Below are positions 5,861 through 37,547 of a stretch of 49,109 nt of DNA, piece by piece. The stretch is taken from positions 138,037 through 187,145 of the forward strand of contig NW_005434574.1 of NCBI RefSeq assembly GCF_000315625.1. The letters are read 5' to 3'. This stretch comes from Guillardia theta CCMP2712. Taxonomy: Eukaryota > Protista > Cryptophyta. The stretch's first letter is position 1; every line of letters starts with the position of its first letter. The notes below the pieces were generated by a model. That model searched no databases. It was given only the letters and a program-made list of their open reading frames with translations, and was not told the origin of the DNA. The position numbers were made by a program, and so were the translations under genes.

Positions 5861-6851
5861 CGTTAGGGCAGTACAGAGCGGTGCGACGTGCCCCGTGCAA
5901 GGGGAGGCTCATGGCGTGTAGGGGGAGTTTCAAACTTGTTTATAAATTTGTACCACAAGAAGGCTTTACAACTAAGTTGGTAGACTACCCCACGATCTGA
6001 CTGTAACTTGTGGGGTGTAGCCCTACTTCTCTGTTTATACTCAACCATTACACAATACAGTCTAAAATATCTTATTGGAAAACAAAATGAGAATTATAAA
6101 GCTGAATTCGAACCCTATTTCAGATTCTCAAACACGCCACCCCCAAATCTACCTAGAAAGCAGAACAACCCCCCCACGGGAAAGCATACAGCCCAAAACA
6201 GACCAATCAAAATGTCAGGTCCGGCGGCCCGCTGCCACCGATTACAATCATCCGTCACGGTTCTCGTTCTGATTGATTTAACTTAACTCAAGTTTGAGTA
6301 AACTTTAATGAGACTCTGATGTCGCCACCCGGTGATCTTTACTCGGGGACTCGGTCCCGGCAGGATTAGTATGAGGCTAGTACTACTACTACGGTAGGCT
6401 ACGGAGCTTTCCCAGACGACAGTGGCTGGCGGGCCTAGTGAGTCTTTGCTGTCCCCAGGATTTACTATGTGGAAATTTTAGTCACTGAGTTGACTGAAGG
6501 AATTTGGAATTCGGCGGCCGCCATGGGGAGACAAGCGACCTGAGGGAGGGAGGGAGGTGTACGGAGGATGCGAGGAGGGGTCAGTTGAAGAGTACGACAG
6601 ATATCAGAAGAAGCTGATGAGCATGCATCGCTCTCTTCGATGACGTGCACCCGTAGATCTTTGCAACCTTGAGTCCTTTGCGCTGGAAGGAGCCGATAGT
6701 CCATGTTGACGAAGAGTTCGATCACTTGTGTTCTGTTGGCTCCTTATGAGTTCATGTCAGAGGGCATGTTGGAACTACATTGCTGCTTCATGTCGTTGCC
6801 TGACTTTTTCTTGCGTCTCTCTGTTTGTTTGCAGGAGTTAGCTGGAGAACG

Positions 6852-31519: not shown

Positions 31520-33981
31520 TCAAGTAAGAGCCGCAAGCAGATCCCGGCACACCTCAAGGTTGTGCTTCTCAACAGCCTTACGAATAATCTCAATGCCTCC
31601 TAAATCCTTGAAGCGCTCAAGGTTGTTAACGTTGCTGGCCGTCATACTCCTCAGCGCCCCGCATGCTGCCTCCTGTACCCCCGCATGCTCCCCGTGCCTC
31701 TCCGTTGCCTTCACCACCGCCTCTACCCCCCTTGCCTCCCCCGCCTTGACCTGGTTGGCAAAATGGTTCGCTGTCATATTCCACAAGGCATTGCATGCTG
31801 CCTCCTGTACCCCCGCGTGCTCCCCGTGCTGCCCCATCGCCCTCACCGCTGCCTCTACTCCTCCTGCCTCCCCTGCCTTGACCTTGTTCGCGGCGTTGCT
31901 GTACGTCATGCTCGTCAGCGCCTTGCATGCTGCCTCCTGTACCCCCGCATGCTCCCCGTGCTGCCCCATCGCCCTCACCGCCGCCTCTACCCCCCCTGCC
32001 TCCCCTGCCTTGACCTTGTTCGCCGCGTTGCTGTACGTCATGCTCGTCAGCGCCTTGCATGCTGCCTCCTGTACGCCCGCATGCTCCCCGTGCTGCCCCA
32101 TCGCCCTCACCGCTGCCTCTACCCCCCCTGCCTCCCCGCCTTGACCTTGTTCGCGGCGTTGCTGGCCGTCATGCTCGTCAGCGCCCCGCATGCTGCCTCC
32201 TGTACGCCCGCATGCTCTCCGTGCTTCCCCATCGCCCTCACCGCTGCCTCTACCCCCCCTGCCTCCCCTGCCTTGACCTTGTTCGCCGCGTTGCTGTACG
32301 TCACGTTCCTGAGCGAAAAGCATGCTGCCTCCTGTACGCCCGCATGCTCCCCGTGCTGCCCCATCGCCCTCACCGCTGCCTCTACTCCTCCTGCCTCCCC
32401 CGCCTTGACCTTGTTCGCCGCGTTGCTGTACGTCATGCTCGTCAGCGCCTTGCATGCTGCCTCCTGTACCCCCGCGTGCTCCCCGTGCTGCCCCATCGCC
32501 CTCACCGCCGCCTCTACCCCCCCTGCCTCCCCTGCCTTGACCTGGTTCGCCGCGTTGCTGGCCGTCATGCTCGTCAGCGCCTTGCATGCTGCCTCCTGTA
32601 CGCCCGCATGCTCTCCGTGCTTCCCCATCGCCCTCACCGCCGCCTCGATCCCTCCTGCCCTTCGTACTCTGACTCCGTTGTCGGATTTGCAATCTATGAT
32701 GTTCCTCAGAGTCCGGTACGCTGCCTGCTGTACTCCGGCATCGTCTTTTCTCTCCTTCATCTCGTGTATCACAGTCTCAATCCTTCCATCGACGTCTTCC
32801 TCTGACAGGTTCGTCACGTTCTCTCCAAGCCTTCTGATTTTGACATGCCTCTCCTCCTCTGTCTCGATCTCTCTCTTTCGCTTTCGTCCATCCTCCGGCC
32901 TCTCTGGCTTATTTTCTCTTATCCTCCCCAGGGCTACCACCAGCTCTGAGAACCGCGGTCGGTCCCCCTCCCTCGTCCTCCAGCAGCTCTCCACCTCACC
33001 CCACAGCCCCTCCTCGCATCCTCCTTCTATCTCCTCTCCTTTCAGTCTACCTCCCCCGCACACGTACACGATCACCCGCTCGTCCTCCGTCATCTGGTAG
33101 TAGGGGATCTTGCCTGACGTGAGGATCTCCCAGCACGTGACCCCGAAGCTCCACACGTCGCTCTTCTCCGAGTACCGTCCTCTCTGCAGTGACTCTGGCG
33201 GCATGTACCGCACTGGCCTCGATTGTCCTGCCGCTACCGTAGCGTGAGTGCGGCGATCGAGCTCCGCTGCCAGCCCGTAGTCCGTCACCTTCACCGACGT
33301 CTTCCGCACGTCCTCCTTGTCGAAGCCGAAGAGCAGCACGTTCCTCGCCGCCAGGTCCCGGTGCACGACCCCGGTCTCTGCCAGGTGCTCCATGCCCTGC
33401 GCGATCTGCTGCATCATCACCACCTGATGCTCTCTTGTCAGCTGTCCTTCCAGCCTTTCAAACGCGTCGCTGAGCGATCCGTGCTCGGCAAACTCCGCCA
33501 GCAGCACCCGGCAGCCACCCTCCTGAGTCTGCCCCATGTACCGCACAAGCCGAGGATGCCGCCCCAGCCTCATCAGCACCCCTGCTTCTCTCTGGCCGTC
33601 TCCTTGCCTCACCTTCAGCACCGCCACCTTCAACCTCCTCGTTTCCTCTCCTCGCACTCGCACTCGGAGGTGACCCGTGTAGACGGTCTTGTTGGAGCCT
33701 GCTGAGATGAGCTGCGGGTCGATCTCCAGGTCTCCTCTGGGGATCATCAGCGCATGCTGCTCCTGCCACTCTTGGATGGCGTTGCGAAGAGCGAGGTTGG
33801 GAACGAGGTCCCTGCGGGGGAGGCGGGAGCCGGTGAGGGGGCTTGTGCGATGCTGCTGGAGCCAGGTCTCGATGAAGGATCTCTCGTACGTGTGGCCGTC
33901 GCAGGTGTTGACAGGGTCGGTCATCAACTGCATGCTGATGGGGCAGAAGAAGGAGGGAAGCGCTTGCTGCTGCTCTGCCAT
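31520..33981 (-). CDS. U-box + tyrosine-kinase-like domain + ARM-repeat protein, intronless; 1-bp frameshift near 32135
   Basis: ATG 33981. U-box 'FFCPISMQLMTDPVNTCDGHTYERSFIETWL..SPLT..LVPNLALRNAIQEW'. Kinase 'HRDLAARNVLL..VKVTDYGL..PVRYMPPE..SDVWSFGVTCWEILTSGKIPY'. Then 44-aa ARM repeats. ORFs 32119..34059 and 31520..32692 join across the frameshift. Confidence 0.9.
31620..32740 (-). repeat. 132-bp coding tandem array: 8 near-identical plus 1 divergent ARM repeats
   Basis: gcatgctgcctcctgtac at 31661, 31793, 31925, 32057, 32188, 32320, 32452 and 32584 (period 132, once 131). Confidence 0.95.
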
Positions 33982-34149
33982 GGGGCTAGCTAGGTAAGAA
34001 CGAGTCAAATTTGAGCAGAGGATGAGTTTGAATTTGAGCAGAGGATGAGCAGAATCCAATTTGAGCAGACAGTGACTGGTTGATGAACCTGAATGGGCAT
34101 ATTTGGAATTGGAGGGAAGAATTACAGGGAGCAGGGAAAACTTCCAAAT

Positions 34150-34450
34150 TTCAGGGAGGAACCCGAAGACTCAGGCTTAGAGCCTGCCTACTCACTAAAT
34201 AAAGAGTCCGGGGGCCTCCCGGGCTGAGCCTCGGACTCACTGTCACCGTTGGGCTGACCGGGCCCGGGGGCCGGTGATGGATCACATGCCAGCCGTGCCA
34301 GTCAGATAGCGCCGAGTTAACAAAACTCTCCTGTAAACCAAGAGATCGGACGTCCTTACGTGTTTGCAGGAGAGTCACTTTTGTGAGAGTTTGGCGTGAC
34401 TCAGTGACTTTGGACTCAGGCTAAGTACAAGTCACTGAGTCTGACAAACT
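34150..34450. promoter_or_regulatory. Putative bidirectional promoter island between the kinase gene and NOC4
   Basis: Divergent ATGs at 33981 and 34731; dense TGACTCAG/GTCACT/ACTCAG motifs; GATCGGAC at 34344. Confidence 0.45.
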
Positions 34451-34730
34451 TGTATTCCGTCAAAGCACGCAGATATCACATCGACCTTAGTTGTAACAAG
34501 ACAGTTTTTGCTCAAGACCGAGTTTAATGCACACAAAACCAGAATTGAGGAGCACATGAGAGATAGACTGTATGCTGGCTATGTAGGTAGTGAAAATTGA
34601 ATTCTTTACTCAAAGTAGTATACCCTTTTTCATGAGTAAAATTTTACTATTGGAAATTTCAAGTCACTATCAGAATGACTCAAGTCGTTCTTCCAACATC
34701 TGCGGTACACATCAGAATAGCACGTGCGCA

Positions 34731-37547
34731 ATGGCTGCAAAGCGTAAAGCAGATGCGAGGGCAGGAGGAGGGGCAGGAGGAGGGGCAGGAGGAGGGGCAG
34801 GAGGAGGAGGAGGAGGGAGGAACACGGGGAAAAAAGATGGGGATATCAAGCCGAAGGACATAACCAGATCGAAGAAGGCTTCCGAGCTCAGAAAAGTTGA
34901 GGAGGAGGACCCGACGGTAGAGGGCAGCGAAGAGGAGGAAGAGGATGGAGATGGGAGCTTGCCGATCAGAGACGTGAGCGAGGTAAAGAGACTGGAAGCA
35001 GAGATGAAAGAAAGCAAGAAGAACCTCAACAACGCCATGACCTTGATCGTCACCTGCGAGCGGATCATGAAGCAGAAGCTCGAGGGAGAGCAGCAAGCGG
35101 GAGCCTTGTTGAGCAGCAGTCTCCTCGCGCTGTGCAGATCCTGCTCACGTCTGATGGATACGGGAGATCTTGTGCCGCAAGGGGCTGGGCAAGACAGCAA
35201 GACTGCAAGCAGCGACGGGAAGGCAAATGGTGATGATAATGGAGAAGAGGAGAAGGGGGAGGGGAAGTCGGCAAGGGAAGTTTTCCACTCGTGGGTTCGT
35301 GGAGTGTACAGGAGGCTGGTGAAGAGGATCATTGCGTGTACGTCGCACCAGTCACCGTCCTTGCAAGCTCTTGGAATGCGAGCTGGGATGGGGCTGGTAG
35401 CAAGGGAGGCGGAGACGGCGATTAGGAATGGGTTACCGCCGCACTCGTTAACGGAAGGGCTCTTCCATGTGTTGCTGGGAAGCATGATCAGCAATGAGCA
35501 TCTGTCTTATGACGTTGTGCTGAAGTTCGAAGAGAACTACTTGGACAAGTATGGAGATGTCAGGTGCTACACGTGGCGAGCCATCGGGGCGTTTGTTCGC
35601 AGCAAGGTGCTGAAGCAGAGCGAGCAAGATGCGATTGCGAAGATGGACGTGTATGCTAAGAATATTCTGGACTTCCTCAATGCTTGCAAGGTCCCCGAGG
35701 CTGACGACAAGACGAAGGTAGTCTCCCTCCCGAGCCTGGTAGGAGAGAAGCCCAGGAAGGAGGAGGACGTGGGAGGAAAGAGGAAGCGGGGTCAGGCGTC
35801 AAAGTTGGATTTCTCGCACCTGTCCACGTTTTCTAAGTCCTTCTCCGATGCCTGGCTGAGTTTCATGCGCTGCCACCTCCCCGACTCGACTTTCAAGAAG
35901 ATCCTAGCTCGCCTCCACCTCCACATCCTCCCTCACCTCCACCAGCCCCTCCTGCTGGCAGATGTGCTTACAGAGTGTTATTCGCGAGGAGGGATAATCT
36001 CAGTCCTTGCCCTCCATGGCATCTTTCATCTGATCCAGGTGAGTGGGTCGTCATGTCTGTTAGAAGAGTTGTGTTCTTTTCTTGATGTTGTGGTTTTCTT
36101 GTTCATATTGGACTTTTTGTGTGTCCGAGTTTGTTAGTTTGACTTGTTGCTTTCTTGTCTGCAGAACAACAACTTGGAATACCCTGAATTCTACATCAAG
36201 CTGTATGCTTTGCTCGAACCGTCTATCTTCTATGTGAAATACAGGAATCTTGAAACATGTCTTCTTCTTGTAAAATGACGTGAAAGTGCAGGGCCAGAGT
36301 GTTGAGATTGACAGAAGATTGTCTTAAAACACCTCTTCTTCCTGCCTACGTCATCGCTGCTTTTGTAAAGAGGTGAGGAGAGGAGGAGCAAGAGGCGAAG
36401 GAGGAGCAGGAGGAGCAGATGCCGAGGAGAAGCAGGGAGCAGCAGCAGAGGAGGAGCAGGAGGAGCAGGAGGGTCACTGGAGCTGGACGGGAGGAGGAGG
36501 AGGAGGAGGAGGCGGGGGGCGACGAGCAGAGTAACGAGGAGCAGGATGATTAAGATTTCAATTTGTGCAGACTTGCTCGACTTGCATGTTGGAGTCCGAC
36601 AACAGGAGCTTCAATCGCTCTGCCGATGATCTACAACTTACTAAGGTCTGATCCTGCTGCTCCTACACCTGCTCCTGCACCTGCTCCTGCACCTGCACCT
36701 GCACCTGCTCCTGCTCCTGCCCCTGCTTCCCATGGTCATCTTTCCCCTTATCCTCTTCCCCCTCCTCCTACTTCATTCCTGCTCCAGCTTCACAACCTCC
36801 AGCTGTTGTTCTCGCTACACCTTTCCTTCCTCCTTCCCTCGCTCGCCCACTCCCCTTCCTTCCCCTTCCTCCTCCTCTTCTCCTCAATCTTGCTGCAGGA
36901 AGCACCAGACTTGTCTCTTCCTCGTTCAGAGCGTCGGGGATGCGAAGAAAGCAGAAGACGCAGAGGAAGAAGAAAACTCTCCTCCCTCTCCCCACAACTT
37001 CACCAACGATCCTTATGACGTCCACGAACCTGATCCCAGCAAATGCAAAGCGATGCAGTCTTCGTTGTGGGAATTGCAGGTGATAGAGAGGATGATGTTG
37101 ATGTTGATGTTGATGTTGATGTTGATGCTGATGCTGATGCTGATGTTGATGATGGAGATACAGATGATGGAGATGATGATGATGGGGATGAATTTCATGA
37201 TTATCATTTCGATTTCTTCTGACACCTCGGCAGTTGTTGAAGAGACATTTCGTCCCAGACGTCTCCAAACTTGCTGGTGCGGTTCAGCTTTACGAGAGAT
37301 GTCAATGTTGATATTGTTCACAGGAGTTTTTGATGATCCAATCACAAGGCAAAGGCCAGAGCTGTCACTCAGTGAAGTTNNNNNNNNNNNNNNNNNNNNN
37401 NNNNNNNNNNNNNNNNNNNNNNNNNNNNNNNNNNNNNNNNNNNNNNNNNNNNNNNNNNNNNNNNNNNNNNNNNNNNNNNTTTTTCGGGCTAGTCTCCTCC
37501 CCATGGTTTTATCATTACCCCCCCCCCTCCCCCTTTCTTTCCTACCC

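What the first reader, a model, noticed from the sequence alone, without database searches (positions are those of the whole stretch)
33600..33715. Tyrosine-kinase-like domain with a WNK-style relocated catalytic lysine
Seen: the glycine loop reads ISAGSNKTVYTG, with Lys at the third Gly of GxGxxG. Beta-3 reads KVAVLKV, with Leu where VAVK has its catalytic Lys. Known: this swap defines WNK kinases (GRGSFKTVYKG / VAWC). The rest of the domain is not WNK-like but TK-like (HRDLAARN, PVRYMPPE, SDVWSFGV..WE); the alphaC Glu and both catalytic Asp residues appear retained, and DFG is DYG. Inference: an independent origin of the 'with-no-lysine' active site on a tyrosine-kinase scaffold.
Basis: partly seen in the sequence, partly recalled or inferred. 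Interest (0 to 1): 0.85.

Follow-up and report, generated by a model that had tools for sequence, protein, structure and literature searches.

The report
Algal tyrosine-type kinase with relocated lysine
A cryptophyte-alga gene joins a ubiquitin-ligase U-box, a tyrosine-kinase-type domain and armadillo repeats, and its ATP-anchoring lysine sits in the glycine loop as in human WNK kinases; this swap is fixed across a large protist family unrelated to WNK that I did not find described, so the family probably evolved the same active-site trick independently, though no activity has been measured.

Summary
Observation confirmed. The motifs lie in a single-exon minus-strand gene (33981-32119) of Guillardia theta: U-box, tyrosine-kinase-type domain, ARM repeats. 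Lys98 occupies the third glycine-loop Gly (start of beta-2), Leu122 the beta-3 Lys position; Glu132, Asp209 and Asp234 are intact. The swap is a family trait: of 120 homologous domains assigned by C-lobe alone, 118 have the loop Lys and none has the beta-3 Lys; none of 207 other kinase domains has the loop Lys. The Lys of VAVLK is not conserved (27/120), which rejects a register shift. With both columns masked, the family is one clade (100/99) among HRDLAARN kinases; its N-lobe matches Src/Abl/ITK/Tie2, not WNK, and the genome has a separate true WNK. Named members: cryptophytes, a haptophyte, Telonema, Tetraselmis and, tentatively, bdelloid rotifers; most carry a U-box or RING. Only 2 of about 25 close paralogs keep every catalytic residue. 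Activity and Tyr specificity are untested. This copy has a private Phe-to-Asn loop change, an ARM-array frameshift and no RNA support. Precedents for a beta-2 Lys exist (WNK, POMK), none found on a TK scaffold. The scan reported this family earlier at at least seven other loci of this genome.

The parts
32119..33981 (-). Single-exon ORF, 620 aa: U-box, TK-type kinase, ARM repeats (ends early at the frameshift in the ARM array)
33754..33954 (-). U-box E3 ubiquitin-ligase domain (aa 10-76)
   Evidence: Pfam PF04564 E 3.1e-19
32920..33738 (-). Tyrosine-kinase-type domain
   Evidence: PF07714 E 3.5e-57 versus PF00069 2.3e-31; best solved matches are all TKs
33688..33708 (-). Glycine loop ISAGSNK; Lys98 (33688-33690) at the third Gly position, start of beta-2; Asn97 replaces the family's Phe
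33610..33630 (-). Beta-3 KVAVLKV; Leu122 (33616-33618) at the canonical catalytic-Lys position; Lys123 variable in the family
33586..33588 (-). alphaC Glu132, conserved in 117/120 family domains
33340..33363 (-). Catalytic loop HRDLAARN (Asp209; TK-type AAR)
33274..33282 (-). DYG (Mg-binding Asp234); DYG is the commonest form in the family (85 Y, 51 F)
33193..33216 (-). P+1 loop PVRYMPPE (TK-type Pro; Tyr where most TKs and 88/143 family members have Trp)
31630..32659 (-). ARM-repeat array, 132-nt unit, 7.8 copies; one unit is 131 nt (one base missing in a C-run near 32133-32146), giving a stop at 32119; the ARM frame continues to a stop at 31520

Best explanation
The gene is a member of an ancient protist family of tyrosine-kinase-type (HRDLAARN) kinases, usually fused to a U-box or RING E3 ligase, in which the beta-3 catalytic Lys was replaced by a hydrophobic residue and a Lys at the third glycine-loop position (beta-2) took over anchoring of the ATP phosphates, convergently with WNK and POMK. 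Shown: the residues, their register, family-wide co-occurrence, one origin inside TK-type kinases, a non-WNK N-lobe. Inferred: Lys98 contacts ATP with Glu132, Asp209 and Asp234 completing the site; intact members are active kinases; in this protein the ARM repeats bind a target, the kinase phosphorylates it or itself, and the U-box ubiquitinates it. The many catalytically dead paralogs would act as sensors or partners.
For: 118/120 C-lobe-defined family domains have the loop Lys, 0/120 the beta-3 Lys, 117/120 the alphaC Glu; 0/207 other domains have the loop Lys. No domain among the 690 aligned has both lysines. HRD-Asp 135/143, Asn 140/143, DFG-Asp 134/143 are kept, as expected of working enzymes, at about 30-60% identity. 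In the G. theta dead subclade the loop Lys and alphaC Glu are both Gln, together with loss of the DFG Asp, in 11 of 11 copies (one inherited event). One clade 100/99 with both columns masked (99 under the mixture model). N-lobe profile: Src-Abl ancestor 55 bits, ITK 53, Tie2 52, no WNK among the best 60. Fold: Eph/FGFR/RET TM about 0.85, Fes Z 32.8. U-box or RING found in 97 of 142 non-genome family proteins, many of them fragments. WNK's beta-2 Lys is required for activity (PMC10211241).
Against: No enzymatic data. The model has no ATP and gave no coordinates, so the Lys-phosphate distance was not measured. This copy has G-to-S and F-to-N changes in the loop (the nearest paralog reads GSFK), a frameshift in the ARM array and no RNA coverage in three runs. 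Most close paralogs are pseudokinases, so the family tolerates loss of catalysis.
Confidence: 0.72

Rival explanations
1. The family consists of ATP-binding pseudokinases: the loop Lys holds nucleotide as a conformational switch for the fused E3 ligase, without phosphotransfer.
For: No canonical beta-3 Lys; about 23 of 25 close G. theta paralogs have lost other catalytic residues yet keep open frames; frequent E3 fusion offers a non-kinase output.
Against: Outside the G. theta expansion the catalytic base Asp, Asn, Mg-binding Asp and alphaC Glu are all kept in about 94-98% of members; a pure ATP-binding switch would not need the catalytic base.
Confidence: 0.14
2. The family is active as described, but this copy is a decaying or silent duplicate.
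For: Private Asn97 in place of Phe, frameshift in the ARM array, no RNA reads over 32630-34000 in runs X5, X6, X7, and an 89%-identical paralog (G000:C369) with the family-type loop.
Against: All six catalytic positions are intact while most paralogs lost them; the missing base is in a C-run, a common assembly error; even the short frame keeps U-box, kinase and about four ARM units; the RNA test had no positive control (the neighbouring gene's first bases had no reads either). This rival concerns the copy and is compatible with the family claim.
Confidence: 0.3
3. Lys123 (VAVLK) is the catalytic Lys, shifted one residue by a beta-bulge; the loop Lys is incidental.
For: A Lys lies one residue after the canonical position in this protein and its closest relatives.
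Against: That position is K in 27, V 24, R 20, Q 17, E 14 of 120; 86 of 110 otherwise intact members have no Lys within two residues of the beta-3 site, yet keep the loop Lys. The model shows an unbroken strand.
Confidence: 0.03
4. The N-lobe or the loop came from a WNK gene (chimera or gene conversion), so the Lys is homologous rather than convergent.
For: The family consensus IGxGSFKTVYxG is nearly the WNK loop; the N-lobe profile aligns to the G. theta WNK exon (hhalign probability 96%, 22% identity).
Against: The N-lobe profile ranks TKs and TKLs above all 15 WNK chains in the PDB. EGFR already reads GSGAFGTVYKG, so one G-to-K change gives the motif. Beta-3 (VAVL versus VAWN/VAWC) and the alphaC-beta4 loop (LGRHPRL, as Tie2 LGHHPNI) are not WNK-like.
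Confidence: 0.04

Closest known systems
WNK kinases (WNK1-4, plant and protist WNKs)
   Same: Lys at the third glycine-loop Gly position on beta-2, no beta-3 Lys, alphaC Glu kept; loop GSFKTVY.
   Different: WNK has VAWC/VAWN, HRDLKCDN, DLG and GTPEFMAPE (G. theta WNK, L058) and is a Ser/Thr kinase on its own branch. This family has VAVL, HRDLAARN, DYG/DFG, PxRW/Y, falls among TK-type kinases and is fused to U-box or RING.
POMK/SgK196 and the CAK-chloro subfamily
   Same: Independent shifts of the positive charge from beta-3 to the glycine loop (PMC13519141; PMC1821047).
   Different: POMK is a sugar kinase lacking HRD, DFG and the alphaC Glu; CAK-chloro is a small-molecule-kinase type with Arg55/Met72 and Phe at alphaC. 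Neither is a TK-type protein kinase.
Tyrosine kinases, including the divergent non-holozoan 'Group B' TKs (PMC8662651) and Phytophthora TKs (PMC3019232)
   Same: AAR catalytic loop, Pro in the P+1 loop, fold and best matches (Eph, FGFR, Fes, ITK); placement in the tree.
   Different: The TK-type rows sampled here keep GxGxxG and VAxK; the Phytophthora TKs are stated to keep the subdomain II Lys. This copy has Tyr for the TK-specific Trp and no activation-loop Tyr.
Plant U-box kinase and U-box/ARM (PUB) proteins (from own knowledge, not tested)
   Same: Same three module types: E3 U-box, kinase, ARM repeats.
   Different: Plant PUB kinases are RLK/Pelle-type Ser/Thr kinases with a canonical Lys; here the three modules share one chain and the kinase is TK-type.

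Membership tests
WNK kinases | Lys at the third glycine-loop Gly (beta-2) with no beta-3 Lys | tested here: met
   Lys98/Leu122
WNK kinases | Catalytic loop HRDLKCDN, DLG, GTPEFMAPE, beta-3 VAW[CN] | tested here: not met
   HRDLAARN, DYG, PVRYMPPE, VAVL versus the genome's WNK
WNK kinases | Kinase domain closest to WNK1-4 by sequence or fold | tested here: not met
   No WNK among the best 60 (whole domain; N-lobe profile) or the best 50 folds
WNK kinases | Beta-2 Lys required for activity; chloride inhibition | not testable with these tools
   needs an assay
Tyrosine kinases (TK group) | Catalytic-loop AAR motif | tested here: met
   HRDLAARN; Arg in 142/143 family members; feature from PMC8662651
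Tyrosine kinases (TK group) | P+1 loop Pro in place of the Ser/Thr-kinase Thr | tested here: met
   Pro256; 127/143; feature from PMC3019232
Tyrosine kinases (TK group) | TK-specific Trp after the activation loop | tested here: not met
   Tyr in this copy; Trp in 88 and Tyr in 39 of 143 family members
Tyrosine kinases (TK group) | Groups with TK-type kinases against TKL/other kinases | tested here: met
   TKL/other set separated at 99/96; family inside the HRDLAARN set; exact sister group unresolved
Tyrosine kinases (TK group) | Canonical beta-3 Lys (VAxK) | tested here: not met
   0/120 family domains
Tyrosine kinases (TK group) | Phosphorylates tyrosine | not testable with these tools
   needs an assay; LMTK is a TK-clade Ser/Thr kinase (PMC8662651)
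U-box E3 ligases | U-box domain above the Pfam gathering score | tested here: met
   69.3 bits versus 21.4; E3 activity not tested

The most novel reading that the evidence does not exclude
A second, independently evolved and undescribed family of active 'with-no-lysine' eukaryotic protein kinases, built on the tyrosine-kinase scaffold, phosphorylating tyrosine, spread over cryptophytes, haptophytes, telonemids and green algae (perhaps transferred to bdelloid rotifers), and wired to U-box/RING ligases as active-kinase plus pseudokinase sensor arrays.
Probability: 0.45. Interest if true: 0.8.

Novelty: new variant of a known kind. Interest (0 to 1): 0.62.

Why it matters
WNKs have been called the only functional eukaryotic protein kinase family lacking the beta-3 Lys (PMC1821047), and the Lys position is tied to their chloride sensing (PMC13686953). 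A second family on a TK scaffold gives a natural experiment: does moving the Lys by itself open an anion or inhibitor pocket, and can a tyrosine kinase work this way? It would also mean that VAIK-based pseudokinase catalogues misfile hundreds of protist kinases as dead, and it points to an unstudied phospho-ubiquitin signalling family in abundant plankton.

Tried and rejected
Register shift onto Lys123: rejected by conservation. WNK membership or a WNK-derived N-lobe: rejected. Viral source: no glycine-loop Lys among about 100 kinase domains from 68 viral-contig loci; the best ESM Atlas feature hit was a Nucleocytoviricota cluster, but all kinase clusters scored 0.98-0.99, so it is uninformative. 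The invariance of the Lys in alignment A1 was not used as evidence because A1 was selected on it; searches are the counts made without selecting on the Lys (the C-lobe profile was trained on Lys-bearing members but scores only C-lobe columns). The 41 'G3=Gly, no beta-3 Lys' rows are off-by-one alignments of VAAK-type strands or dead halves of unrelated tandem kinases. A metagenome scan for more WNK loci found nothing; the G. theta WNK is spliced, so I used its exons separately by reference and left out any joined model, which is why WNK is not in the trees. The careful mixture-model tree did not finish; the LG+G4 bootstrap had not fully settled. Twenty weaker genome hits could not be fetched. 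Kwon et al. 2019 (pseudokinase census) and Manning et al. 2008 were not held, so prior mention there is unchecked. Eight literature searches found no description of the family. The ARM frameshift was not tested with reads, as the single read-laying run avoided the repeat.

Full report
Locus. The finding lies in a single-exon minus-strand ORF, 33981-32119, 620 aa. Pfam gives U-box at aa 10-76 (E 3e-19), PK_Tyr_Ser-Thr at 92-350 (E 3.5e-57, against 2e-31 for Pkinase) and ARM repeats. The genome is 87.1 Mb in 669 contigs and the nearest named homologs are GUITHDRAFT proteins, one 89% identical; I take the source to be Guillardia theta CCMP2712. The ARM array is 7.8 copies of 132 nt; one spacing is 131 nt, so a base is missing in a C-run near 32133-32146 and the frame stops at 32119, while ARM repeats continue in another frame to 31520. 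Whether this is real or an assembly error was not tested.

Observation. All motifs are present as stated. Lys98 aligns with the third Gly of GxGxxG and Leu122 with the Lys of VAVK/VAIK in the Src-Abl ancestor and EGFR. An AlphaFold2 model (pLDDT 90.8, pTM 0.89) puts Lys98 at the start of beta-2 and shows beta-3 unbroken, with Glu132 in helix C. The tools returned no coordinates and no ATP, so contact of Lys98 with phosphates is inferred.

More than chance. In the first homolog set, which was not selected on the Lys, 63 of 64 database proteins lacking the beta-3 Lys had Lys at the loop position, and all 23 with Gly there had the beta-3 Lys. After profile searches, I assigned domains to the family by C-lobe score only: 118 of 120 have the loop Lys, none has the beta-3 Lys (L 93, M 6, Q 6, I 5, S 5, A 3, V 2), 117 have the alphaC Glu; none of the other 207 domains has the loop Lys. 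The residue after Leu122 is Lys in only 27 of 120, and 86 of 110 otherwise intact members have no Lys near the site, which rejects the register-shift reading. HRD-Asp, Asn and DFG-Asp are kept in 135, 140 and 134 of 143.

Origin. The best solved relatives by sequence and fold are tyrosine kinases: EphA8, ITK, FGFR, RET, Fes, JAK1, Csk. With the two diagnostic columns masked, 33 diverse family domains form one clade (bootstrap/SH-aLRT 100/99 under LG+G4; SH-aLRT 99 under LG+C20) inside the HRDLAARN kinases and apart from the HRDLKxxN set (99/96). The sister group is unresolved. The family N-lobe alone ranks the Src-Abl ancestor, ITK, Tie2, MLK4, CTR1, Abl and Trk first, with no WNK among the best 60, although 15 WNK chains are in that library. 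The genome has its own spliced WNK on another contig (GQGAYKTVY, VAWN, HRDLKCDN, DLG, GTPEFMAPE). I used its exons separately and left the joined model out, so WNK is not in the trees. Since EGFR reads GSGAFGTVYKG, one Gly-to-Lys change explains the likeness to WNK's loop. Convergence is the simplest reading.

Range and architecture. Named members with the loop Lys: Guillardia, Rhodomonas salina, Hanusia phi (cryptophytes), Chrysochromulina parva (haptophyte), Telonema subtile, Tetraselmis sp. GSL018. Several come from transcriptome assemblies, so the family is expressed. Most hits are unnamed metagenome proteins. Tandem kinases of the bdelloid Rotaria sordida also show loop Lys, no beta-3 Lys and alphaC Glu, and nest in the clade on a long branch; this is tentative. 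Of 142 non-genome family proteins 68 carry a U-box and 29 a RING pattern; ubiquitin-like, UBA, WD40 and ARM domains also occur. No viral-contig kinase had the loop Lys.

Paralogs. G. theta holds at least 34 distinct domains with the loop Lys and 10-11 with Gln. Of the about 25 closest, mostly intronless U-box-kinase-ARM genes, only this gene and the 89%-identical copy on C369 keep Lys, Glu, HRDLAARN and DYG together. Eleven copies have Lys-to-Gln, Glu-to-Gln, Asn-to-His and Asp-to-Gly together: the loop Lys was lost along with the other catalytic residues, as expected if it is one of them, though this is one inherited event. The C369 copy's N-lobe is in an assembly gap; a contig of run X1 matches C369 at all 8 comparable variant sites and reads GSFK with Lys, VAVLK and Glu unchanged. 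Asn97 is therefore private to this copy.

Expression. No RNA reads or contigs covered the gene in runs X5, X6 and X7. X5 has reads of at most 60 nt, 6% was sampled, and no unique sequence in the laid stretch was covered, so this does not show silence.

Mechanism. Most likely (0.72): intact members are active kinases in which the beta-2 Lys anchors the ATP phosphates as in WNK, where mutating it abolishes activity (PMC10211241). The AAR loop and P+1 Pro point to tyrosine substrates, but this copy lacks the TK Trp and has no activation-loop Tyr, so specificity is open. The U-box/kinase/ARM layout suggests target binding, phosphorylation and ubiquitination in one chain, and the excess of dead paralogs with variable repeats suggests sensor or decoy partners; both are inference. 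Rivals: ATP-binding pseudokinase family (0.14), register shift (0.03), WNK chimera (0.04); separately, this copy may be decaying (0.3).

Known and new. A beta-2 Lys is known in WNK and POMK (PMC13519141) and a similar charge shift in CAK-chloro; WNKs were called the only functional ePK family lacking K72 (PMC1821047). Divergent non-holozoan TKs are known (PMC8662651, PMC3019232). Eight searches found no description of this family, but Kwon 2019 and Manning 2008 could not be read. It works like WNK at the ATP site by inference, is not a WNK, and is TK-type rather than a proven TK. The scan's earlier notes describe the same family at at least seven other loci of this genome; they are not independent support, and I reached this reading before consulting them. 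What this locus adds is the U-box-ARM branch, the 2-active-of-25 pattern, the coupled Lys/Glu loss and the bdelloid lead.

Verdict. Real feature, new variant of a known kind, interest 0.62.

Noticed in passing
window 34275-34345 and 34448-34576: Dispersed repeat between this gene and its divergent neighbour: at least 40 genomic copies at about 95% identity, the two pieces in opposite relative orientation elsewhere, often in pairs 1.2 kb apart; very deep in RNA runs on opposite strands, with poly(T/A) loose ends at 34505. Possibly ends of a transcribed mobile element or a small-RNA family.
   Followed up: partly
P0290, P0384, P0278 (P0290 named Rotaria sordida): Bdelloid rotifer tandem kinases with glycine-loop Lys, no beta-3 Lys and HGDLGCRN-type loops nest inside the family on a long branch; possible horizontal transfer into animals.
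   Followed up: partly
L003-L025 (G000 C74, C38, C192, C62, C207, C122, C361, C337, C67, C300, C363, C239 and others): Recent expansion of U-box-pseudokinase-ARM genes with intact long frames; several lie near a second family member of the kinase-RING type with HRELAARS (C122, C239, C67, C300, C409), suggesting a duplicated two-gene unit.
   Followed up: partly
L058 = G000:C123:123017-126036: A true, spliced WNK kinase gene of this genome (E 2e-20 to WNK3).
   Followed up: yes
window about 5920-5945 (G000:C100:143959): A sequence repeated identically at seven loci in the pattern search, another dispersed repeat.
   Followed up: no
window 34728-36400 (+): Divergent, spliced neighbouring gene; first exon has no Pfam hit; by eye it resembles NOC4/CBF ribosome-biogenesis proteins (unverified).
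   Followed up: no
P0277 (Tetraselmis sp. GSL018): Tandem kinase in which both domains carry the loop Lys; annotated 'Janus kinase 2' by its source.
   Followed up: partly
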